Assembly: GCF_006345805.1 (NCBI RefSeq)
Contig: NC_043006.1
Location: forward strand, 36,146,001 to 36,210,000
Reading direction: 5' to 3'
Source: Octopus sinensis
Lineage: Eukaryota
Length of the DNA stretch: 64,000 nucleotides
The translations under genes were made by a program, and so were the position numbers. This document shows, one piece after another, positions 11,083-62,550 of the stretch (position 1 is its first letter; every line of letters starts with the position of its first letter). The notes beneath the pieces were generated by a model. That model saw only the letters and a program-made list of their open reading frames with translations, had not been told where the DNA came from and ran no database searches.

Positions 11083-11114
<32 letters not shown>

Positions 11115-11120
<6 letters not shown>

Positions 11121-11504
11121 TATGAACATAATTATAATTAGGAGTCATCTAATTGCGTTACCACATACCGAATTTAGAAATTGCAGTTAAAAATTCCTTT
11201 TCTACTACTATAAGAACCTCCACGACTGTAACACACTTTTTTACGTAGGCAAAGAGAAAAACAATGAATCAACACGAATCCGATTAGTAGTTATAGTAGT
11301 AGAAAATAAATATTTTAAACTCCTATTTCTAAATTCGGTATGTGGTGAAGCAATTAGCTGACCCCTAATTATAATTATGCTTATAATTGTAGAATATTTG
11401 TATAATTTTACCTATAAAGATTATTTTAACGTACCGAGCTACTTGGTAAAATTATTAATTAATTGATAGATTAATTAATTTTAGCCTTTTATTATTAATT
11501 TGAA

Positions 11505-11546
<42 letters not shown>

Positions 11547-11930
11547 TATGAACATAATTATAATTAGGAGTCATCTAATTGCGTTACCACATACCGAATT
11601 TAGAAATTGCAGTTAAAAATTCCTTTTCTACTACTATAAGAACCTCCACGACTGTAACACACTTTTTTACGTAGGCAAAGAGAAAAACAATGAATCAACA
11701 CGAATCCGATTAGTAGTTATAGTAGTAGAAAATAAATATTTTAAACTCCTATTTCTAAATTCGGTATGTGGTGAAGCAATTAGCTGACCCCTAATTATAA
11801 TTATGCTTATAATTGTAGAATATTTGTATAATTTTACCTATAAAGATTATTTTAACGTACCGAGCTACTTGGTAAAATTATTAATTAATTGATAGATTAA
11901 TTAATTTTAGCCTTTTATTATTAATTTGAA

Positions 11931-11968
<38 letters not shown>
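11115..11968. repeat. Two apparently identical tandem 426-bp foldback units separated and flanked by (TA)n
   Basis: Units start at 11115 and 11541; each has ~65-bp inverted repeats (e.g. 11128-11195 vs 11310-11375). Confidence 0.9.
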
Positions 11969-11970
<2 letters not shown>

Positions 11971-15610: not shown

Positions 15611-16375
15611 AATTCATTCATTCATTCATTACATACGAAGAAACATTCATTCATTCATTACATACAAACAAACATTCATTCATTCATTACATACAAAAAA
15701 GCGTTCATTCATTCATTGCAAACAAACATTCATTCATTCACTGCATGCAAACATTCATTCATTACATGCAAACATTCACTCATTTATTCATTATATACAA
15801 ACATTCATTCATTCATTACATTCACTCATTTGTTTATTCATTATATACATTCACTCATTCATTCATTCCTTCATTACATGCAAACATTCATTTATTCATT
15901 CATTACATTCACTCATTCATTCATTATATACATTCATTCATTCATTCATTACATTCACTCATTCATTCATTCCTTCATTACATGCAAACATTCACTCATT
16001 CATTCATTACATTCACTCATTCATTCATTATATACATTCATTCATTACATTCACTCATTCATTCCTTCATTACATGCAAACATTCACTCATTCATTCATT
16101 ACATTCACTCATTCATTCATTATATACATTCATTCATTCATTCATTACATTCACTCATTCATTCATTCATTCCTTCATTACATTGAAACATTCATTTATT
16201 CATTACATGCCAACATTCATTTATTTATTCTTTACATTCATTCATTCATTCATTCATTCATTCATTACATACCAACATTCATTCATTCATTCATTCATTA
16301 CATACCAACATTCATTCATTCATTCATTCATTACATACCAACATTCATTCATTCATTCATTGATTACATACAAAC
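15611..16375. repeat. (CATT)n-derived complex satellite with higher-order periodicity
   Basis: CCTTCATTACAT motif at 15868, 15972, 16064 and 16172. Confidence 0.9.
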
Positions 16376-17216
16376 ACTACGGAGTAGAATTAGCGAATAC
16401 TAAACAAAAAAGAAATACGAATCGACAGAATTTTGCAGCAACAGGAAGAACCATAACTCTTTCCGTACTAATAATTTACGAGTGAAATCGAAAAGTAATC
16501 TAAGGGCAACAACTCCTATTTCTCCATGTTAATTCGTCCAACTAGAACAAATGACACCCAAATAATAACATTGGGAAAATAAACTAAAATAAACCACGAA
16601 CAAGCCAACATACCAAATGGTAAAACAATTCTTTCTACAGAACGGCGGAATCTTAAGAACATACCAAAATACCAGGGTGGGCGGTATAAGAACTGGACAA
16701 ATTCCTTCCAATACAATAGAATAACTGAAAGACAGGATAGCAACGAATCGCTAAAAAATAAGCCTATTTTTAGAGAACAGGATCTCGAATCAGAAGCGAA
16801 AGAAGACCTTAATTAGAAAATATTGAACCAACTGACCCCAAGAAAACTCTCACAACGAAATTTCAGAGAAATAGAAATGGAACTTCTGCAATGTGGACAG
16901 AAATTCACGCCAACTCTCAAACCTGACACGACAGATCTTGTAACGAAATACTGAAGAGTGTTGTAGAAAACTTCATCCGTGGAAATTCTTCTAAAATAAA
17001 CACGACGAAGATCCATCAATCGTGAAAAAAAAATGCAGGATTTAAACCACCGATAAACAGGAATAAATACTTAGAAGAATGTATAACGGGGCTGAAAATA
17101 TCTGCAAACTTAAACATTCCAACAAGCCATAAAAATCATTACAAATCAAGAACAAGAAGCTTTCGAATGTCTTCAGAAATATTCGCCCCATAATCATTAC
17201 CTACCTACCTAGCAAC

Positions 17217-17796: not shown

Positions 17797-18335
17797 TCTC
17801 ATGGTTCCGGGTTCAGTCCCACTGCGTGGCACTTTGGGCAAGTGTCTTCTACTATAAGCTTGTGAGTGGATTTGGTAGACATAAACTGAAAGAAACCCGT
17901 TGTGTATGTATTGTGGTAGGGGGGTTGTCCCCTACCACCGCTTGACAACCGGTGTTGGTGTATTTATTTCCCTATAACTTAACGGTTCGGCAAAAGCAAC
18001 CGATAGAATTAGTACCAGGTTTCAAAAAAGAAAATAAGTCCTGGGTTTGATTCATTCAACCAAAAATTCTGCAAGGCGATGCCCCAGCATGGCCGCGGTC
18101 TGATAGCTAAAACAAGTAAAAGGTAAGAGATAATGATTATTCTAGTGAAAATAGTTTGAACAAGGCGACGAGCTGGCAGAAGCATTAGCACGTTCTGAGT
18201 TCAAATTCCGCCGACGTTGACTTTGCCTTTCATCCTTTCGGAGTCGATAATTGAAGTACCAATTGCGTACTGGAGTCGATCTAATCGACTGGCCCCTTCC
18301 CCCAAAATTTCGGGCCTTGCGAGCATAAAAGAATA
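17797..18335 (+). mobile_element. SINE B (17797-18130) followed by SINE A, older-tail type (18162-18335)
   Basis: ATGGTTCCGGGTTCAGTCCCACTGCGTGGCAC...; AAGGCGACGAGCTGGCAGAA...CCCCAAAATTTCGGGCCTTG. Confidence 0.8.
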
Positions 18336-19182: not shown

Positions 19183-22100
19183 ATGCCAAAGTCTAAAGTA
19201 AAAAGAAAAATATTGGCGACCAAATTGACCGAAGATCTTGAAGAAATGCGTAAGAAAATTAAAGCAAAAAAGCAAATGACTATTTCCATCAAAGACATAT
19301 ATTATCCAAGGATAAAAGAATATAAGGACAATATTGAGATGATGATAAACAATATAGATAGAAAATGTATTTACTTGGAAAGTATCGGATTAGATAAATT
19401 TCGTTTTCTACAAGATGTCAAAAGTAGATTAGATATTCTGGAGGGGGATATTAACAATCATGAATTTATTGTTTTCCCAAAACTGAATTGGTTTCTCGAA
19501 CGACTTTTTGAAATCTATGTAAGCGACAATCATTCAACGTACAAGAACATAGCAATGCCAACGCCATACAGTAAATTTCGTCATCCCTCTTCAGTTGTCT
19601 CTACAACACCAGAGTTTCATGCTTCTGGTGAAGATTCCCAGAACTTAATTACAAACATTGTCGCAATTTACAATGGAATAGTAACCTATTCACCGCATTT
19701 AATGACATTACGCTGTACTACAACGAACCATGACGAACACGTGCTTCACTGTCCTTCCCAAGTCACTGATATTGCTAAAATTTGTAAAGACACGGTTATG
19801 GTAACAATTCCGTTTCGGAAAAAAATTCTATTCTTCAGTCCTTCTTCTTGCACAATGAAAACTTTTCCGTACGGTTTTAAGAAGATTTCCCATGTAAAAG
19901 ATTATGAATTTGTGGGTGTGAAACTCTTTAGCAAAATAATATATCTCGTAGACTGGTATAATGATACAATCGAAAGCAAATTTAGCCTAAAAGATGAACC
20001 TACAAACATTGCAATAGCAGAATACCGCCTCTTAGTCACATTTACTAATTTCAATCATATTTCTTGCTACAACCTCAATGGTCATCAATTATTTCAATTA
20101 TACGGCCATTCTTTAGATTCTTCACCAGCTATCACCGTTTATCATAACTATTTTTATGTCCTCCAAGGTAATATTATTCATAGAATTTCTCCTACTGGTG
20201 GTGTATCACAAAGAGAAATTGGAATAAAAGCCCGGCATCTTACTCTTGGTAAAAATATTATTGTCTTGTCCGACTATTTAGGTTTTGTGCACATTATTAG
20301 AACAAACGAAGACTTTTGGCCAAGGACAAGCTATTTGCAGAAGTTTCAAACTCCAGTTTTAAATAATCAAATTTATATAGACGATCCAGGCTATGTTCAA
20401 TGGATTTTGCCTATATCAAGAAATTCTACATTATTTATCTATTCACGTCCGAAAGCTGTATTATTCACAGATAATGGAAAAGAAATCCTCGAAAAGGCTT
20501 GTAAATTTCATTTCCAACCTGATGTCTTTTGTAAATTCAACTCAAACACTTTTCTTATTCTGTTCAGGGAACAGAAAAAGATTCAATTCATTTCGTACTC
20601 CGTTCACTACCCAATACTAAAACAAGGTCACATCATAGACGTCCACTTTGATTACATTCGAATGTGTCATATGATATTAGATAAGGTTTTGGCTGTGACC
20701 ACAAGTGAAAGTAAAGAGGTACACATCCTTTCTATTAAAAATGACAACGTCATAATCGAAAACAAAATTTCATTGGAACATGTTGATGTCACCATTGCTG
20801 CGACTCCACTCAATTTCATAGTAGGAGATTTGAAGGAAAACAAACTGCTTTTTTATTCAAGTTTTGGGGAAAGGCTTTTTGAAAAACAACTGGATTTTGA
20901 CTTCCATCACATCTACTCCGATAATTTATACTTTTATATTGTGCACAATAAAGGTTACTTTCTCAAGTGTTACAATATATATGGAGAAGTCGAATGGCGA
21001 TTACAATTTCCTTGCGCTGTTCACTCTCAAATCGGTGTTTTCCAAGGAACTTTTTCTGTGCTAGACATTAAGCTCAATAGAGTTCTTTTTTACAAGTATA
21101 AAGAATGGTCCAGTTGTCATTTAGATTTGGTAAATCCTTACATTCAAAATATAGATTTACGAGATTCCTATAAGAATAAGAAAATTCTCATCGCAGATGT
21201 ATGTCATCTACCAAATGGACAGCTGGTCGTATCAGACATGAATACATCTTGCTTGTTATACATTTCCAAAGATGGACGTGTAATGTCTACATTATTTCTG
21301 CCGTCCTTAGCTACAGATATATGCCGATGGGATAGTAGCCAAATAGGAATAACATTACCATTGGAGAAAGAATTAAGGGTAATCGGAAATCTATCGAAAC
21401 GAGTTCGAAGTATATCGTTAAGTAAACCTTATGTATGTGTACGCAAATTCAGTAATGGTCGAATTCTTTGCTTTTGTGATAAGCCATGCAATTTAGATAT
21501 TGTATCGATTCAAAAACACAACCAAGGGGAAATCATTTCTACAATCAGTGTCCCTTTCGTAATAAAGTCATTAGCAATTGACGATGAAACATTCAATGTG
21601 CTGATTGTTACTAAGAAGAAAGTATTTGAGTGTAAAATCTCATCAAAAGCTGACTCCACTCTTTTACCCACCAACTTCAAACCTCAGTGTTTTCTGCATG
21701 GCGGATGCATTGATAAAACTTGTGTTTATCTGATAGACGAAAGTCGACTGTTTGCTTTAAGTAACCATAATTTGGAGATGAAGGATCCTCTGACCAGGAA
21801 TCAGCTTAACATGTTCATTGATCACGTCGATGTATTTTCAAGAAACATTTGTGTAACTGAAATGCTGTCTTCGAAATTATATCTGCAGGATTTATCAGTT
21901 TCTGATAAATCTCGAGAATGCTTGGTCCCTCAGTGTTTAGGAGATGAAAAAACAGTGAACGTTCTTTGTTCAGTTATTACTGAAAACAACTTGATTGCAA
22001 TATGCGATCAAAATAATAAGAACATTAAGGTATTAACTTTTGATGGAAAACTTCTGGACTCAATCAAACTGGATGTTTTACCCATTCGAATGTGTCGATG

Positions 22101-24207
22101 GAGGCCAAACACATTGGCTATGACAGTTACTGCAAATCAATTGTTATCATTAGCAGTTGAATTTCCATTGTCCTTCACCACATACGAGGTAGAAAGAAAA
22201 TATAAGTGTATCGCTTCTTTTTCAGATAATCAATTAGTTTGTAGTATTCGTCAACGGATTCAGACTAACAAAGGTCCCACAAGAATAACAATGGGAACGA
22301 ATTTTTCGGACGATAAAACAAAAGTGCCTGCCCTTCATATCATTGAACTACTTCCGACAATCCGTGTAATAAAAGAAATAGACTTAGAAAGGAACGAAGT
22401 GAATAATGGCCTATATGATATCGCAGTTAATGCTGATGATGTCATTATCGTCTACGCTGCAGGGTTTCGTTTAATCAAGAAATTTATCATTTTTATGAAC
22501 CGCAATGGTGAACGTTTGCATACTTTTTGTCCCTTGGTGTCTATGAGAAGTGGGTGTTTAACAATCGACGACGCTTATGTCTACGCTTCTCTACAGAATT
22601 CTCACGATGAAAATACTCGCATTGTTTGTTTGACACACACTGGCAAATACAAGAAAATATTTTTTAATTCAGAACATTGTACGCGTCCATTTAATTTCAC
22701 CAGCATTAGCTGCAAAGGTCCAAAGTTTGTTGGATTTGACAAAAAGTATTTATATGCTGAAGGCATGCTTAAATTAAATCGGGAAAGTTTCCACGTTTGT
22801 CAGCTAGTGACTGACCGATATTCTGTTCAAATAAAAGATATCGATATTTCTGTGGATGGGAAGACAGTTGTGATTGAAAAGGGCAATACTGGAAATGTTA
22901 AACTGTATCAGAGAAATGGGAAGCTGCTATATCACACGGATCTTGAAACTTTAGTTGGTGGTGTGTGCTTTTCAGACAAAAACTACATAATGGTCACAGT
23001 TCCTGATAGACAAGAAATATTTCAACTGAGCCAAGAAGATTTGAGAAGGTGTAAAGTCTGGCAAACTTCAGTATCTTATGGATTAATACGGAAAAAAATA
23101 AGAAATACTTACTATTGTGTACTTACTAATTTGGCTGAATATCATATCATACAGATTGATGGCGACCAGTTGAAAGTTCTGAAATGTACGTCAATAAAGC
23201 TTGGTTCTGTTCTTCATTTCTCTTCCAGTTCGGATATTATAACTCAGATAACTAATAAGAAAGTGGTAGTTAACCAATCGAGAAGTAGATCAAGTGAAAT
23301 TGTTGAAAGAGGCCTAAAAGTGAGACGTGGTAATTACATAGCAAATTGTACATTGAAGAACGATCAAATAACAATCAGGAGGTTACCTCATAGAACCAAG
23401 ATGTTTCCAATTTCAACTACAGTTTTTGGGGATCCAAATAGGGGCTGCGACTTTGGAATCTACAAAAACATACATCTAATTAAGCTACAAGAGGATATAG
23501 TTGTACTGCTATACCAGCTTACTCTTATTGTGGCCACAACAGAAGGTCACATACTTCAGCAGAGAGCATTTGAAAGAATGCCACTTGACATATGCTACTG
23601 GACGGAAAGGTGTTTCGTTGCCGTCTTCTCTGATGTTAAAGGGCTGATGTTCTTCAACAGTGATCTGACACTTTTAAAAACCATCAACACGGAAAAAACA
23701 TACACCATGATTCATAAAAAAAATACTGGTCGATTGGTCTGTGCATATGAAGGTGATCCAAATCGGATATATCGTCCACATCTGCCATCCTCATATGTAG
23801 ATGTACTTCACATTGACGGTGCAACGTTTGAATACAGTTGTCAAATGGATTTTGGGATGGACACAGTCACAGCAATTGGTGTCACATCGAGCGAAGACAT
23901 CGTTATCCTGAAGAAAAGCGAATCAAGTGAAAGTCTTTGTTGGTATAGAGATGGATTGGTTAGGCTTCTCGACATACCGTTAAGGTGGTTTCCCAGACGA
24001 ATAGCAATACACGGGGAAAAGGTGTACATAACGGAAAGAGAGAGCGATATTTTACAAGTAACATTGGATACTTCAATGGAAACTTACATCAGTCTTGCTG
24101 ATATCGAAGTCTACCTCATCTACGATATCCATGTTACAGAGGGTTCTTTGATTCTTCTAGGAGGCTTAGACAGCTATTCTTGTGCCGTTTTTTGTTACGA
24201 AACATGA
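19183..24207 (+). CDS. 1674-aa uninterrupted ORF: N-terminal coiled coil (aa ~1-105), S/T/P-rich linker, then ~6 tandem NHL-like beta-propeller modules (TRIM-NHL-like C-terminal domain type, expanded in molluscs)
   Basis: 5-kb ORF with no stops or microsatellites in a repeat-saturated window. There is an in-frame TAA at 19162-19164 just upstream. A recurring module signature appears six times: VTDIAKICKDTVMVTIPFRKKILFF / PDVFCKFNSNTFLILFREQKKIQFI / ATDICRWDSSQIGITLPLEKELRVI / PIRMCRWRPNTLAMTVTANQLLSL / VGGVCFSDKNYIMVTVPDRQEIFQL / PLDICYWTERCFVAVFSDVKGLMFF. Domain call is by motif recognition, not a database search. Confidence 0.88.
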   Translation: MPKSKVKRKILATKLTEDLEEMRKKIKAKKQMTISIKDIYYPRIKEYKDNIEMMINNIDRKCIYLESIGLDKFRFLQDVKSRLDILEGDINNHEFIVFPKLNWFLERLFEIYVSDNHSTYKNIAMPTPYSKFRHPSSVVSTTPEFHASGEDSQNLITNIVAIYNGIVTYSPHLMTLRCTTTNHDEHVLHCPSQVTDIAKICKDTVMVTIPFRKKILFFSPSSCTMKTFPYGFKKISHVKDYEFVGVKLFSKIIYLVDWYNDTIESKFSLKDEPTNIAIAEYRLLVTFTNFNHISCYNLNGHQLFQLYGHSLDSSPAITVYHNYFYVLQGNIIHRISPTGGVSQREIGIKARHLTLGKNIIVLSDYLGFVHIIRTNEDFWPRTSYLQKFQTPVLNNQIYIDDPGYVQWILPISRNSTLFIYSRPKAVLFTDNGKEILEKACKFHFQPDVFCKFNSNTFLILFREQKKIQFISYSVHYPILKQGHIIDVHFDYIRMCHMILDKVLAVTTSESKEVHILSIKNDNVIIENKISLEHVDVTIAATPLNFIVGDLKENKLLFYSSFGERLFEKQLDFDFHHIYSDNLYFYIVHNKGYFLKCYNIYGEVEWRLQFPCAVHSQIGVFQGTFSVLDIKLNRVLFYKYKEWSSCHLDLVNPYIQNIDLRDSYKNKKILIADVCHLPNGQLVVSDMNTSCLLYISKDGRVMSTLFLPSLATDICRWDSSQIGITLPLEKELRVIGNLSKRVRSISLSKPYVCVRKFSNGRILCFCDKPCNLDIVSIQKHNQGEIISTISVPFVIKSLAIDDETFNVLIVTKKKVFECKISSKADSTLLPTNFKPQCFLHGGCIDKTCVYLIDESRLFALSNHNLEMKDPLTRNQLNMFIDHVDVFSRNICVTEMLSSKLYLQDLSVSDKSRECLVPQCLGDEKTVNVLCSVITENNLIAICDQNNKNIKVLTFDGKLLDSIKLDVLPIRMCRWRPNTLAMTVTANQLLSLAVEFPLSFTTYEVERKYKCIASFSDNQLVCSIRQRIQTNKGPTRITMGTNFSDDKTKVPALHIIELLPTIRVIKEIDLERNEVNNGLYDIAVNADDVIIVYAAGFRLIKKFIIFMNRNGERLHTFCPLVSMRSGCLTIDDAYVYASLQNSHDENTRIVCLTHTGKYKKIFFNSEHCTRPFNFTSISCKGPKFVGFDKKYLYAEGMLKLNRESFHVCQLVTDRYSVQIKDIDISVDGKTVVIEKGNTGNVKLYQRNGKLLYHTDLETLVGGVCFSDKNYIMVTVPDRQEIFQLSQEDLRRCKVWQTSVSYGLIRKKIRNTYYCVLTNLAEYHIIQIDGDQLKVLKCTSIKLGSVLHFSSSSDIITQITNKKVVVNQSRSRSSEIVERGLKVRRGNYIANCTLKNDQITIRRLPHRTKMFPISTTVFGDPNRGCDFGIYKNIHLIKLQEDIVVLLYQLTLIVATTEGHILQQRAFERMPLDICYWTERCFVAVFSDVKGLMFFNSDLTLLKTINTEKTYTMIHKKNTGRLVCAYEGDPNRIYRPHLPSSYVDVLHIDGATFEYSCQMDFGMDTVTAIGVTSSEDIVILKKSESSESLCWYRDGLVRLLDIPLRWFPRRIAIHGEKVYITERESDILQVTLDTSMETYISLADIEVYLIYDIHVTEGSLILLGGLDSYSCAVFCYET

Positions 24208-27619: not shown

Positions 27620-27830
27620 TTATTTCTAAAGTTTTGGCACAAGGCTAACAGTTTGAGTGGAGAATCGATTACGTTGACCTCAGAAGTCCACTCGTACTTA
27701 TTTTATCGATCTCGAAAGAATGGAAGACAAAGTTCTCCACAGCATTTGAACTCAAAATGTTAAGACGGAAGAAATTCTGCTAGGCGTTTTGTCTCGCGTG
27801 CTAATGATTCTGCCAGCTCGCCGCCCCTAA
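27620..27830 (-). mobile_element. Diverged SINE A
   Basis: ..TTTGAACTCAAAATG..GATTCTGCCAGCTCGCCGCC. Confidence 0.65.
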
Positions 27831-31182: not shown

Positions 31183-32249
31183 TTGAATCATGACTTTTGT
31201 TTTCATTTTTGTGGTTGTATTAACTTTAACTGATATTGAAAACTATGTTTTCAAAGTTGTGTCCAGCTCCATACATGAGTCTGCATTTGATGAAGCCAAA
31301 TCTATCCTTAGAAATGGCGACAATACTGTAAATGTTGAAAAAGTTACATTTGAGTTTGTGAAAAATCTTGACGTGATAGAACAAAATGGATTTCAATTCT
31401 TGAAATCAACAGAACTCAAAATTACTAGGAAATTACTCCAACACCAAACAACTAAAGCCATGTTTCCCAGTGTAACACAAAAACACTGTATACGCTGCAA
31501 TAGAAGAGAAATAAAATTTATTAATTTATTCTGCCTATGCAGCCTGGGATTGGCCCACGGTCAAATGCTTAGGGACACCTTGTTTGGACAATATTACCCT
31601 GTTTTTTTCTTCTTTTTTTTTACTCAAGCTCCGTAAAGAAAATGCTTTTAAACGAAATTGATGTTATTTGTTTGGGTGTGTGGTTAAGAAGCTCATTTTC
31701 AACCACATGATTTTGAGTTCGGTCCCACTTAGCGAACCTTGGGAAAATATCTTCTACGATAGCCTCAGGTTAACTAATACCTTATGAGTGTCTTTGGAAG
31801 ACGGAAACTATGTGGAAGCCCGTTGTGTATGTGTGTAGGTGTGTGTGGTATGTGTAAGTTTGTGAGTAAGTTTGTGTGGAGGTGTAGATGTGTTTGTGCG
31901 TGTATGTGAGCGTGTGTGTTTGTGTGTGTGCATACGTGCCTACGTGTGTGTGCGCACGTGTATGTGCGTGTGTATTTGGTAAGAGATTTCTGTGCTGCAT
32001 CTGACGACCATAACTGCAGAAGTAACGCGAGCCGAACGAACAAAGCAGTTGGTTTGTGTGAAAAACGCATTGTTACGAAGGGCTCGTGTTAGTGAGCAAT
32101 TAACACAATCAAATCTGATGAGTCATCTACTCTGGTACACATCTTCTAGACTTTATAATCGTCATTTCTACTGCTGTTCTACTGAAACTGAATTAAGAAC
32201 CTTAAAAAATAAAAAGAACAGTATTATTAAAACTTTTTTTAAAGTCAGT

Positions 32250-32568
32250 GTATTGGCAGAATGATTAGCACGCCGGGCGAAGTGCTTAGCGGTATTTCGT
32301 CTGCCGGTACGTTCTGAACGACAGGCGAAATACCTATTTCTATACTACCCACAAGGGGCTAAACACAGAGAGGACAGACAAGGACAGACAAACGGATTAA
32401 GTCGATTATATCGACCCCAGTGCGTAGCTGGTACTTATTTAATCGACCCCGAAGGGATGAAAGGCAAAGTCGACCTCGGCGGAATTTGAACTCAGACCGT
32501 AACGGCAGACGAAATACCGCTAGGCATTTCGCCCGGCGTGCTAACGATTCTGCCAGCTCGCCGCCTTA
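32250..32568. mobile_element. SINE A head (plus) joined to full SINE A (minus, 32334-32568)
   Basis: Junction GAAATAC|CTATTTC at 32333/32334. Confidence 0.85.
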
Positions 32569-50899: not shown

Positions 50900-51799
50900 C
50901 GTATGTTTACCTCTAGTGCCAAAGAGTTATTGTCTCCAACACAGACTGACTGTCCACTCAGCCATGCCGAATCGTCGGCGACCAAACAGCCGCGCCCAGT
51001 TGTCCCTTTCCGAGATTCTGTGTACTAATTGCATGAAAAATCTCTATTAATTAAACGTTGTTTTTCTTTTTAATTTAGAAAGGACAACTGAACTGTGTAG
51101 TCCAAGATATACAGCGTCTAGTGAAATATAAGATGGATGATCATGGTTAGAATGTCTGTCTTTATGAATCTAATGGTACATAGTTTACTTACCTTGTGTT
51201 AAACAACAATAACTAGGAAGAACACATTGGATAATGTAGTCAGGGTGGTCATCGCTGGAATGTCTTTGATCATAGACCTGTAGTTGTTGTTTAACATCTG
51301 GTTAGTCATGATTGGGCAAACTTGTCAAAAACTCTCCAACTGTCTCTACTACACATTCGACGATTTACTCTGAGGGAAAAAAAAGACATGATGGTCACGG
51401 CTGGAAACTAGATCAGCTATAGAGTTGTACACAACATTAACAATGATAACAACCAGATATTATGCTTAATTTCCAAGGAAGCAAAATACGAAGATAGTTA
51501 AGTGTGCCCCAGTATGGGCGTAGCTCACTGACTGAAATTACGAGGATAGGAAAAGTGTACAGATGTAAATAATTAAATGATAGTAATAAATAATTAATGA
51601 GCAGAAATAAATAGTTAATAGGGCGAAATATATATATATATATATCGTACTTTATATATAAGTAGTATTCAAGTATACGTCGCACCCCCAGTTTTTTGGG
51701 GGTTTTTTTCAATTAAAATGAAGCAAAAAGTAGTGCGACTTATACACGAATGAATACGGCGTTTAATTATTTCCAGGATTGAGTTCGTAAATATTCTTT

Positions 51800-52425
51800 T
51801 CTACTCGAGGCACAACGCCCGGAATTTTGAGGGAGGAGGCCAGTCGATTAGATCGACCCCAGTGCGCAACTGGTGCTTAATTTATTGACCCCGAAACGAT
51901 GAAAGGCAAAGTCGACCCCGGCGGAATCTAAACTCAGAACATAAAGACAGACGAAATACCTATCTCTTTACTACCCACAAGGGGCTAAACACAGAGAGGA
52001 CAAACAAGGACAGACAAACGGATTAAGTCGATTATATCGACCCCAGTGTGTAACTGGTACTTAATTTATCGACCCCGAAAGGATGAAAGGCAAAGTCGAC
52101 CTCGGCGGAATTTGAACTCGGAACGTAACGGCAGACGAAATACAGCTACGCATTTCGCCCGGCGTGCTAACCTTTCTGCCAGCTCACCGCCCAATGAGTT
52201 TGTCAATATTATTGACTCCAGTAGTACGCCGGGCGAAAAGCTTAGCGGTATTTTTTTGTCTGCCGCTACGTTCTGAGTTCAAATTCCACCGTGGTCGACT
52301 TTACCTTTCATCCAATCGGGTTCGATAAATTAAGTACCAGTTGCGTACTGAGGTCGTACTGGGGTCGATCTGATCGACTGGCCCCCACCCTCGAAATTTC
52401 AGGTATTGTGCTTATAATAGAAAGG
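51800..52425. mobile_element. SINE A composite (minus, 51800-52192) back-to-back with SINE A (plus, 52225-52425)
   Basis: Junction at 51959/51960; inverted copies about 30 nt apart. Confidence 0.85.
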
Positions 52426-62196: not shown

Positions 62197-62550
62197 AGGC
62201 ACAAGGCCTGAAATTTTGGGGGAGGCGGTAAATCGATTACATTGACTCCAGTACTTGACTGGTACTTGATCAATCGACCCCGAAAAGCTGAAAGGCAAAG
62301 ACGACCTCGGTGGAATTTGAACTCAGAACGTAGCAACGGGCGAAATACCTATTTCTTTACTACGCACAAGGGGCTAAACACAGAGGGGACAAACGGATTA
62401 AGTCGATTATATCGACCCCAGTGCGTAACTGGTACTTACTTAATCGACCCCGAAAGGATGAAAGGCAAAGTCGGTTCGGCGGAATTTGAACTCAGAACGT
62501 AACGGCAGACGAAATACCGCTAAACATTTCGTCCAGCGTGCTAACGATTC

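What the first reader, a model, noticed from the sequence alone, without database searches (positions are those of the whole stretch)
19183..24207. Giant uninterrupted ORF built from about six tandem NHL-like beta-propellers behind a TRIM-like coiled coil
Seen: one 1674-aa ORF in which a ~210-290-aa module recurs at about aa 155, 405, 669, 925, 1216 and 1421 (nt ~19645, 20395, 21187, 21955, 22828, 23443). Aligned blade signatures include DIC.W...xxVTxP..K.I in blade 2 and Y..I....GRxxC in blade 3. Established: TRIM-NHL proteins carry RING/B-box/coiled coil plus a single six-bladed propeller, and molluscs have large, fast-evolving expansions of this type. Inference: a six-propeller array with highly diverged modules and no B-box or RING would be an unusual multivalent receptor or scaffold, possibly for immune or RNA recognition. 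The intact frame in a decayed, repeat-filled neighbourhood implies purifying selection.
Basis: partly seen in the sequence, partly recalled or inferred. Interest (0 to 1): 0.75.

Follow-up and report, generated by a model that had tools for sequence, protein, structure and literature searches.

The report
Octopus protein with six NHL propellers
This is a real, selectively maintained, single-exon octopus gene for a 1674-residue protein built from a short helical head and six diverged NHL-type beta-propellers in a row, an undescribed architecture found so far only in octopods, whose function is unknown but is most likely multivalent binding.

Summary
Window 19183-24207 (+) is one 1674-codon ORF (chance about 1e-52) in Octopus sinensis chromosome CM016868.1. 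Self-BLAST finds no repeats. Against an NHL-domain profile from cephalopod/bivalve TRIM-NHL-like proteins, M4, M6, M3 and M2 score 99/98/97/92% and M5/M1 68/62%. AlphaFold2 gives 23-24 strands (six four-stranded blades) for M1, M2, M4 and M6. Foldseek returns only multi-propeller proteins. No RING or B-box is present. The N-terminal head is helical but shows no homology to a TRIM coiled coil.

The gene has 1:1:1 orthologues in O. vulgaris and O. bimaculoides (dN/dS 0.39, p about 1e-12; flanks neutral). About 25 uncharacterised paralogues exist, many on one small chromosome, and colinear six-module homologues occur in Argonauta. None was found outside Octopoda.

Among paralogues, predicted top-face loops vary more than bottom loops or strands. 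My best reading is a RING-less, intracellular, multivalent NHL binding scaffold derived from a TRIM-NHL-type propeller. Ligand, expression and immune or RNA role remain untested. It is a new variant of a known kind, of moderate interest.

The parts
19183..24207 (+). Complete single-exon coding sequence, 1674 codons plus stop
   Evidence: The same uninterrupted CDS is found in the O. vulgaris and O. bimaculoides orthologues and in paralogue P0002.
19183..19527 (+). N-terminal head, aa 1-115: a K/R-rich variable tail followed by predicted helices 3-28, 36-60, 69-92 and 100-115
   Evidence: AF2 model, (low pLDDT; this part had no alignment). Variable among paralogues. dN/dS about 1.1 on few sites. 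aa 50-137 are conserved to Argonauta (97%). No homology to a TRIM coiled coil.
19528..19653 (+). Predicted disordered linker, aa 116-157
   Evidence: pLDDT <50 and no secondary structure.
19654..20352 (+). Propeller M1, aa 158-390
   Evidence: 23 strands, consistent with six blades, pLDDT about 80. NHL profile 62%. dN/dS 0.42.
20353..21102 (+). Propeller M2, aa 391-640
   Evidence: 24 strands, consistent with six blades, pLDDT 80-89. NHL profile 91.9%. dN/dS 0.29.
21184..21954 (+). Propeller M3, aa 668-924. It is the most conserved module. Some paralogues carry an S/R-rich insertion near aa 820-835.
   Evidence: Blades 1-4 are modelled (pLDDT 65-83); aa 820-924 are poorly modelled, though this stretch is highly conserved among paralogues (many invariant columns). 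NHL profile 96.9%. dN/dS 0.23.
21955..22767 (+). Propeller M4, aa 925-1195. It is the most NHL-like module and the fastest-evolving propeller.
   Evidence: 23 strands, consistent with six blades. NHL profile 99.1%, 211 columns. Cuttlefish RING-B-box-NHL protein hit at E=1.5e-6. TRIM71 blade motif match. dN/dS 0.52.
22768..23466 (+). Module M5, aa 1196-1428: a probable but degenerate propeller with net charge +13
   Evidence: AF2 pLDDT mostly <50, with about 16 strands. NHL profile 67.8%. Blade-like WD/NHL motif. Conserved positionally in Argonauta and P0027 (99.5-99.9%).
23467..24204 (+). Propeller M6, aa 1429-1674, net charge -13
   Evidence: 23 strands, consistent with six blades, pLDDT 80-93. 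NHL profile 97.9%. dN/dS 0.36.

Best explanation
Window 19183-24207 is a functional, intronless, protein-coding gene of Octopus sinensis. It belongs to a family seen so far only in octopods. The protein has no signal peptide or membrane segment, so it is probably intracellular. It consists of a variable basic tail, a conserved helical head of about 90 aa, and six tandem six-bladed NHL-type beta-propellers. Four of these are firmly supported and two are probable.

The propellers most likely arose by internal duplication of the NHL domain of a cephalopod TRIM-NHL-like gene that lost, or never carried, the RING and B-box. With no E3 ligase module and no sign of an enzymatic centre, the inferred mechanism is non-catalytic. 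Each propeller would offer its top face (B-C and D-A loops) as a binding site, so that one chain holds up to six ligands, or six sites on one polymeric ligand such as RNA or an oligomeric protein. The helical head may mediate self-association or localisation.

Paralogues made by tandem duplication differ mainly in the top-face loops of M2, M4 and M6, which suggests diversified ligand specificity. M3 is conserved on all faces, which suggests a shared partner or a structural core.

Shown: ORF, family, repeat, NHL relationship, blade counts, selection, taxonomic range. Inferred: origin, intracellular location, binding mode, multivalency, ligand class.
For: - ORF and chance estimate.
- Family of about 25 long, uncharacterised Octopus proteins with no Pfam domain.
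- Six in-register modules.
- NHL relationship.
- Blade counts and all-beta models.
- Foldseek returns only multi-propeller proteins (IFT-A, Utp21, DDB1, LRP4/megalin) at E 1e-14 to 1e-23.
- No RING or B-box in any member.
- No hydrophobic segment outside a beta-strand, and a non-signal-like N-terminus.
- Purifying selection: dS 0.0975 matches flank divergence of about 10%, dN 0.038, omega 0.39, chi-square p=9e-13, and about 24 stop-gains would be expected under neutrality.
- Colinear six-module architecture in Argonauta (36% identity) and in the deep P0027/P0054 lineage (30% identity).
- Top-face loops are more variable among paralogues (1.30 vs 0.93 vs 0.96 bits, p=8e-6).
Against: - No expression data were available.
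- No ligand, localisation or oligomeric-state evidence exists.
- Single-sequence Pfam NHL is not significant (E=2.5).
- M1 and M5 are only weakly NHL-like (62-68%).
- M5 and the C-terminal third of M3 are poorly modelled.
- Ring closure of each propeller could not be checked from coordinates, and Foldseek TM-scores were uninformative because alignments ran across modules.
- Top and bottom faces were assigned from strand order, not from coordinates. Top loops also contain the longest insertions, which inflates their variability.
- The top-face bias is absent in M1 and M3 and absent between orthologues.
- An unannotated upstream exon encoding a signal peptide cannot be excluded.
Confidence: 0.6

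Rival explanations
1. It is an innate-immune or antiviral pattern receptor. The six propellers would recognise pathogen molecules, and the tandemly duplicated paralogues would form a fast-evolving recognition repertoire.
For: The family is lineage-restricted and tandemly expanded, largely on one small chromosome. Paralogues vary most on the predicted ligand face. M4 and the head evolve faster than the rest. The nearest outside relatives are TRIM-NHL-like proteins, a class often linked to immunity; that link is general knowledge and was not tested here.
Against: Overall omega is 0.39, and there is no excess of orthologue replacements on the top face. The window gene is a stable 1:1:1 orthologue, not a copy-number-variable locus. 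No signalling or effector domain (RING, death-fold, TIR, CARD) is present. No expression or induction data exist.
Confidence: 0.15
2. It is a post-transcriptional regulator. One or more propellers would bind RNA on a basic top surface, as Brat, LIN-41/TRIM71 and NHL-2 do, and the array would bind several motifs on one mRNA.
For: M4 carries the TRIM71/Brat-type blade motif and is the module closest to TRIM-NHL propellers. M5 (+13), M4 (+7) and M1 (+6) are net basic. Some paralogues carry R/S-rich insertions in M3 (weak SR-25 hits). The N-terminal KVKRK motif could be a nuclear localisation signal; this is inference.
Against: Surface electrostatics could not be computed. M6 is strongly acidic (-13). 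RNA-contacting residues of Brat and LIN-41 were not mapped. Many NHL domains bind proteins instead.
Confidence: 0.15
3. It is cargo or a domesticated gene of a transposon or virus. That would explain why it is intronless and multi-copy.
For: The CDS is intronless in all copies examined. There are many copies. The neighbourhood is repeat-rich. A 29-nt inverted repeat pair brackets the gene, 9.6 kb apart.
Against: The inverted arms belong to a dispersed SINE-like repeat with more than 20 copies in the window, and the downstream arm is missing in O. bimaculoides. No transposase, integrase, reverse transcriptase or capsid domain was found in the ORFs of at least 150 aa tested in the window. tblastn of this protein finds no second copy of it in the window. 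Flanks are syntenic and diverge at the neutral rate between species. The nearest relatives are host TRIM-NHL-like proteins.
Confidence: 0.04
4. It is an enzyme array. Some six-bladed NHL-related propellers (peptidyl-alpha-hydroxyglycine lyase, SMP-30/gluconolactonase, strictosidine-synthase-like) are catalytic through metal sites in the central channel.
For: The fold class is shared. The remote relative P0048 also matches SGL weakly. A few paralogues give sub-threshold hits to other six-bladed families.
Against: No significant hit to any enzymatic propeller family was found. The residues conserved across modules look structural (Cys/Trp/Val/Thr/Pro/Tyr of strands A-B) rather than a recurring His/Asp/Glu metal triad.
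Confidence: 0.04
5. It is a non-functional ORF or an annotation artefact.
For: No expression evidence was available. Every database entry is 'hypothetical' or 'uncharacterized'.
Against: The frame is intact in three species where about 24 stop-gains would be expected, omega is 0.39 with p=9e-13, and the coding sequence is 95% identical against about 90% for the flanks. The architecture is conserved to Argonauta at 36% identity.
Confidence: 0.02

Closest known systems
TRIM-NHL proteins (TRIM71/LIN-41, Brat, TRIM2/3/32, NHL-2, Thin) and the cephalopod RING-B-box-NHL protein P0042 of Acanthosepion pharaonis
   Same: The same propeller type: six-bladed NHL with the blade motif 'hhVxD..N..IxhF..dGxhh'. 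These are the best and only whole-module remote sequence relatives. Both have a helical region N-terminal to the propeller.
   Different: This protein has no RING and no B-box. Its helical head shows no detectable homology to the TRIM coiled coil. It has six propellers instead of one and cannot itself be an E3 ligase. It is about 1700 aa against about 650-900 aa.
LRP4/5/6, LRP1/2 (megalin) YWTD propeller arrays
   Same: Arrays of four to eight six-bladed propellers of the same structural clan in one chain, used as multivalent ligand-binding platforms. They are among the Foldseek hits.
   Different: Those proteins are extracellular type-I membrane receptors with EGF spacers, LDL-A repeats, a signal peptide and a transmembrane segment. 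Here the propellers abut directly, with no spacer domains, no signal peptide and no transmembrane segment. The sequence signature is NHL, not YWTD.
Intracellular multi-propeller scaffolds (DDB1 with three propellers, Utp21/WDR36 and IFT122/140 tandem WD40, EML TAPE domain)
   Same: Tandem propellers in a cytoplasmic or nuclear scaffold, sometimes with an N-terminal oligomerising helix (EML). They are the top Foldseek matches.
   Different: Those are seven-bladed WD40-type propellers, with two or three per chain, and they are ancient and universally conserved. This protein has six NHL-type propellers and is lineage-restricted.

Membership tests
NHL-repeat beta-propeller domain (Pfam PF01436, clan Beta_propeller) | Significant sequence or profile similarity to bona fide NHL domains | tested here: met
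   hhalign of family-profile modules against an NHL-domain profile: M4 99.1%, M6 97.9%, M3 96.9%, M2 91.9%. hmmsearch hits to RING-B-box-NHL and NHL proteins at E=1.5e-6 to 1e-4 in 1.84 billion sequences. M1 (62%) and M5 (68%) are inconclusive.
NHL-repeat beta-propeller domain (Pfam PF01436, clan Beta_propeller) | Single sequence passes the Pfam NHL gathering threshold | tested here: not met
   NHL E=2.5, 8.7 bits against a cut-off of 20. None of the 11 paralogues reaches E<=1. The repeats are too diverged for the 28-residue model.
NHL-repeat beta-propeller domain (Pfam PF01436, clan Beta_propeller) | Six blades of four antiparallel strands forming a closed ring | tested here: inconclusive
   AF2 gives 23-24 strands in four-strand groups for M1, M2, M4 and M6 at pLDDT about 75-90, and Foldseek gives propeller hits only. 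Ring closure could not be verified from coordinates. M5 and the end of M3 are poorly modelled.
TRIM-NHL (RING, B-box, coiled coil, NHL) | N-terminal RING finger | tested here: not met
   No zinc-finger hit in the window protein or in 11 paralogues. The N-terminal 155 aa contain one Cys.
TRIM-NHL (RING, B-box, coiled coil, NHL) | B-box zinc finger | tested here: not met
   no B-box hit. Relatives P0042 and P0044 do have one.
TRIM-NHL (RING, B-box, coiled coil, NHL) | Long antiparallel dimeric coiled coil preceding the C-terminal domain | tested here: inconclusive
   aa 3-115 are predicted as four short helices at low confidence. hhalign against the pre-NHL region of P0042/P0044 gives 0.8%. No dedicated coiled-coil predictor was available.
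TRIM-NHL (RING, B-box, coiled coil, NHL) | A single C-terminal NHL propeller | tested here: not met
   Six modules.
LDL-receptor-related YWTD propeller arrays | Signal peptide, EGF-like spacers and a membrane anchor | tested here: not met
   No EGF or LDL domains. The N-terminus MPKSKVKRK is not signal-like. The maximum 19-residue hydropathy is 1.82, inside a beta-strand.
Octopod six-propeller family (this family; unnamed) | Colinear head plus M1-M6, about 1650-1925 aa, single coding exon | tested here: met
   Full-length colinear alignments to P0002-P0011, P0027/P0054 and Argonauta P0026. Single-exon CDS in four loci.

The most novel reading that the evidence does not exclude
Octopods evolved a previously unknown class of intracellular receptor or scaffold: a RING-less chain of six NHL propellers, born from a TRIM-NHL propeller by six-fold internal duplication before the Argonauta-Octopus split. 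Tandem gene duplication then produced a repertoire whose members differ on the ligand faces of propellers 2, 4 and 6. Each paralogue would read a different combination of RNA or protein ligands, for example in RNA regulation of the nervous system or in antiviral and transposon surveillance.
Probability: 0.2. Interest if true: 0.75.

Novelty: new variant of a known kind. Interest (0 to 1): 0.5.

Why it matters
NHL propellers are well-studied RNA- and protein-binding modules, but they are known as single C-terminal domains of E3 ligases. A chain of six of them without a ligase, conserved in module number for the whole history of incirrate octopods and then multiplied into a chromosome-level cluster, is a new way of using this fold. 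It is also a clean example of lineage-specific gene birth by internal domain amplification.

Cephalopod novelties have mostly been linked to protocadherin, C2H2 zinc-finger and GPCR expansions. This would add an uncharacterised, structurally tractable family to that list.

The family is currently invisible to Pfam and carries no precomputed Pfam domain. Defining it would therefore improve the annotation of every octopus genome.

Tried and rejected
1. Self-BLASTP of the protein found no internal repeat at E<=10. The repeat appears only with family profiles.
2. Pfam and PDB sequence searches with the single protein found nothing significant. Profile searches against PDB sequences stayed sub-threshold, although all whole-blade hits were NHL proteins.
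3. Foldseek on the two half-protein models confirmed the propeller class. It could not classify individual modules or show ring closure, because alignments ran across modules and gave low TM-scores.
4. The head was tested against the TRIM RING/B-box/coiled-coil region, with no similarity.
5. The transposon-cargo idea was rejected. The flanking 29-nt inverted repeat is part of a dispersed repeat, and no mobile-element domains were found in the larger ORFs tested in the window.
6. A second large database search with the full family profile added no taxa.
7. Literature searches for the family, its locus IDs, NHL in cephalopods and multi-NHL architectures found nothing relevant.
8. Orthologue replacements show no top-face bias, so positive selection on the binding face is not supported at that timescale.
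Full report
**1. What is in the sequence**

Window 19183-24207 (+) is a single ATG-initiated ORF of 1674 codons. The next longest ORF anywhere in the 64-kb window is 255 aa. The window is AT-rich, with GC about 0.33-0.37 around the gene. At this composition the chance of 1674 stop-free codons is about 1e-52.

The exact protein is encoded on Octopus sinensis chromosome CM016868.1 (GCA_006345805.1) at 36.16 Mb. The surrounding DNA is typical octopus intergenic sequence:
- microsatellites, an (ATTC)n-derived satellite and a 426-bp tandem duplication;
- many copies of a dispersed SINE-like repeat.

tblastn of the ORF protein found no second copy of it in the window, and the other ORFs of at least 150 aa that I tested have no Pfam domain.

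**2. The repeat claim**

Self-BLASTP finds no internal similarity, even at E<=10.

The results were: M3-M6 95%, M4-M6 95%, M3-M4 86%, M2-M6 71%, M4-M5 37% and M1-M2 30%. Every alignment is in register. The N-terminal 154 aa match nothing.

AlphaFold2 domain starts are 158, 392, 670, 927, about 1207 and 1431.

**3. What the modules are**

Pfam does not recognise the protein (NHL E=2.5) or any paralogue. Single-sequence PDB search is empty.

A profile of the C-terminal half was searched against 1.84 billion representative proteins. It found only 35 hits at E<=1e-3, of which 24 at E<=1e-10 are family members. Every remote hit that covers a whole module is an NHL protein:
- P0042, a RING-B-box-NHL protein of the cuttlefish Acanthosepion pharaonis (E=1.5e-6, aligned to M4);
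- P0044, with B-box and NHL;
- P0046, with NHL;
- P0048, with NHL, from a freshwater mussel.

The WD40-rich hits match only one blade-sized stretch of M5.

Profile searches of PDB sequences stay below significance. Apart from two designed or natural WD40-repeat entries that match a blade-sized stretch of M5, the listed entries are TRIM71, Brat, TRIM2 and Thin. The match falls on the canonical blade motif: family 'liavyDennknikiltfDGqLl' against TRIM71 '[22 protein letters not shown]'.

I then built an NHL-domain profile from the remote hits and compared each module profile with it:

| Module | Probability | Note |
|---|---|---|
| M4 | 99.1% | 211 columns |
| M6 | 97.9% | |
| M3 | 96.9% | |
| M2 | 91.9% | |
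| M5 | 67.8% | |
| M1 | 62% | |
| Head | 0.1% | |

**4. Predicted structure**

I modelled two halves with the family alignment, each reaching mean pLDDT 62.7. They are all-beta after residue 158.
- M1, M2, M4 and M6 are modelled at pLDDT about 75-90. Each has 23-24 short strands falling into six groups of four, the six-bladed pattern expected of NHL.
- M3 is modelled for its first four blades. Its last 100 residues are among the most conserved in the family and read as two more blades, but they are poorly modelled.
- M5 is poorly modelled and shorter, so it is a probable but degenerate propeller.

Foldseek against the PDB gives only multi-propeller proteins: IFT-A subunits, Utp21, DDB1 and LRP4/megalin, at E 2e-14 and 8e-23. 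Against BFVD it gives only propeller proteins. The alignments span several modules, so TM-scores are low. I could not verify ring closure module by module.

**5. The head**

Residues 3-115 are predicted as four helices of about 16-26 residues at low confidence (this part had no alignment), followed by a disordered linker. Among paralogues the first 60-100 residues are highly variable, charged and of different lengths. aa 50-137 are conserved as far as Argonauta.

There is no RING, B-box or other zinc-finger signal. There is no detectable homology to the pre-NHL part of the nearest TRIM-NHL relatives (0.8%). 'TRIM-like coiled coil' is therefore not supported; 'helical head' is all that can be said.

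The N-terminus (MPKSKVKRK...) is not signal-like, and no hydrophobic segment exists outside a beta-strand. I infer an intracellular protein.

**6. Is it a living gene?**

The gene has 1:1:1 orthologues: O. vulgaris P0001 (99.5% aa identity) and O. bimaculoides P0066 (XP_014786156.1, 91.8%). Both are uninterrupted single exons in syntenic positions.

Nei-Gojobori estimates against O. bimaculoides give dS=0.0975, dN=0.038 and omega=0.39, from 97 synonymous and 147 non-synonymous differences (chi-square against neutrality p=9e-13). Flanking DNA aligns at 84-94% identity, so dS equals the neutral rate. Roughly 24 stop-gain substitutions would have been expected in a neutral sequence of this length.

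Omega by region:

| Region | omega |
|---|---|
| Head | about 1.1 (17 changes only) |
| M1 | 0.42 |
| M2 | 0.29 |
| M3 | 0.23 |
| M4 | 0.52 |
| M5 | 0.42 |
| M6 | 0.36 |

Purifying selection is thus demonstrated. Its strength is moderate, and the head is relaxed or fast-evolving. Expression could not be tested.

**7. The family**

All strong hits come from Octopus sinensis, O. vulgaris, O. bimaculoides and Argonauta hians. All are 'hypothetical' or 'uncharacterized' and none carries a Pfam domain. Paralogue P0002 is also a single exon.

Many members sit on one small chromosome or scaffold in each species: 29.2 Mb in O. vulgaris, 15.1 Mb in O. sinensis and 18.6 Mb in O. bimaculoides.

A neighbour-joining tree shows a deep single-copy lineage (P0027/P0054), the Argonauta pair, and an Octopus radiation. 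Within that radiation the window gene, with its two orthologues, is sister to P0002.

The head-plus-six-module layout is colinear, and each module matches its positional counterpart, both in Argonauta (36% identity) and in P0027 (30% identity). The six-fold internal duplication therefore predates the family's radiation, and module number has stayed fixed since. No member or intermediate was found outside Octopoda; the nearest outside proteins are ordinary TRIM-NHL-like proteins. This rests on protein databases only, because cephalopod genomes could not be searched at the DNA level.

**8. How it may work**

There is no ligase module and no recurring metal-binding triad. The residues conserved across modules look structural.

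I took the strand phase from the NHL motif (A 'DICxW', B 'xxVTxP', C 'K.I..h') and the AF2 strand order, and classified loops by face. Top-face loops are B-C and D-A, the usual ligand face of NHL and WD40 propellers. Bottom-face loops are A-B and C-D.

Among 11 paralogues the top loops are more variable than the bottom loops or the strands (1.30 vs 0.93 vs 0.96 bits, Mann-Whitney p=8e-6). The effect comes from M2, M4 and M6. M3 is conserved everywhere. Orthologue differences show no face bias.

Two caveats apply. Faces were not checked on coordinates. Top loops also hold the largest insertions.

Net charge differs sharply between modules: M5 is +13 and M6 is -13.

My best-supported mechanism is a non-catalytic, multivalent binding platform whose paralogues differ in ligand specificity. 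Whether the ligands are RNA (as for Brat, LIN-41 and NHL-2) or proteins, and whether the biology is immunity, RNA regulation or something else, is open.

**9. Rivals**

- Transposon or viral cargo is unlikely. The bracketing 29-nt inverted repeat is a dispersed repeat, and one arm is absent in O. bimaculoides. There are no mobile-element domains. The flanks are syntenic and evolve at the neutral rate.
- A dead ORF is excluded by the selection test.
- An enzymatic propeller is not supported by any hit.
- Immune-receptor and RNA-regulator readings are specialisations of the main explanation. They remain possible but untested.

**10. Novelty and verdict**

No paper in the searchable library mentions these loci or a multi-NHL-propeller architecture.

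The fold and the repeat type are known. The architecture is not: six NHL propellers in one RING-less intracellular chain, fixed in module number and expanded only in octopods. I rate it a new variant of a known kind.

It is of moderate interest (0.5). It is solid and undescribed, and it is attractive for structural and cephalopod-evolution work. It currently has no functional or expression evidence.

Noticed in passing
window 32020-32093 (-): A mir-375 precursor (Rfam RF00700, 56.3 bits against a gathering score of 46.7) lies about 7.8 kb downstream of the ORF on the opposite strand. A 133-134-nt stretch around it is 99.2% identical in the syntenic O. bimaculoides flank and 100% identical in O. 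vulgaris. The surrounding flank is about 90% identical, so the hairpin is a conserved, probably functional miRNA gene.
   Followed up: partly
window 15612-16365: An (ATTC)n-derived satellite of about 750 bp with higher-order periods of 21, 25 and 29 nt. It produces the spurious 156-aa and 246-aa ORFs at 15716-16485.
   Followed up: no
window 11087-11970: A 426-bp unit in 2.1 tandem copies at 99% identity, bounded by (AT)n tracts. This looks like a very recent local duplication.
   Followed up: no
window 18190-18335 and more than 20 other sites (e.g. 2365-2465, 32400-32500, 51792-51940, 62202-62331): A dispersed SINE-like repeat of about 100-150 nt at 75-90% identity is scattered through the window in both orientations. 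The adjacent stretch contains the 29-nt sequence at 18164-18192 that forms an apparent inverted repeat with 27797-27825 around the gene. ARAGORN finds no tRNA-like gene in the window.
   Followed up: partly
paralogue loci outside the window (O. vulgaris 29.2-Mb, O. sinensis 15.1-Mb, O. bimaculoides 18.6-Mb CM046628.1 records): Most paralogues of the family, including several truncated gene models, sit on one small chromosome or scaffold in each species, which suggests a large tandem cluster. The window gene and the deep P0027/P0054 lineage lie on other, large chromosomes.
   Followed up: partly
paralogues P0003, P0004, P0005 (insertion aligned to window aa ~820-835, nt ~21640-21690) and P0005, P0006 (C-terminal half): Some paralogues carry long low-complexity insertions in propeller loops that the window protein lacks. 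These are R/S-rich runs in M3, a D/N/G-rich acidic run in M4 (P0006) and a run of about 150 aa of 'SEDQISEE' repeats in M6 (P0005).
   Followed up: no
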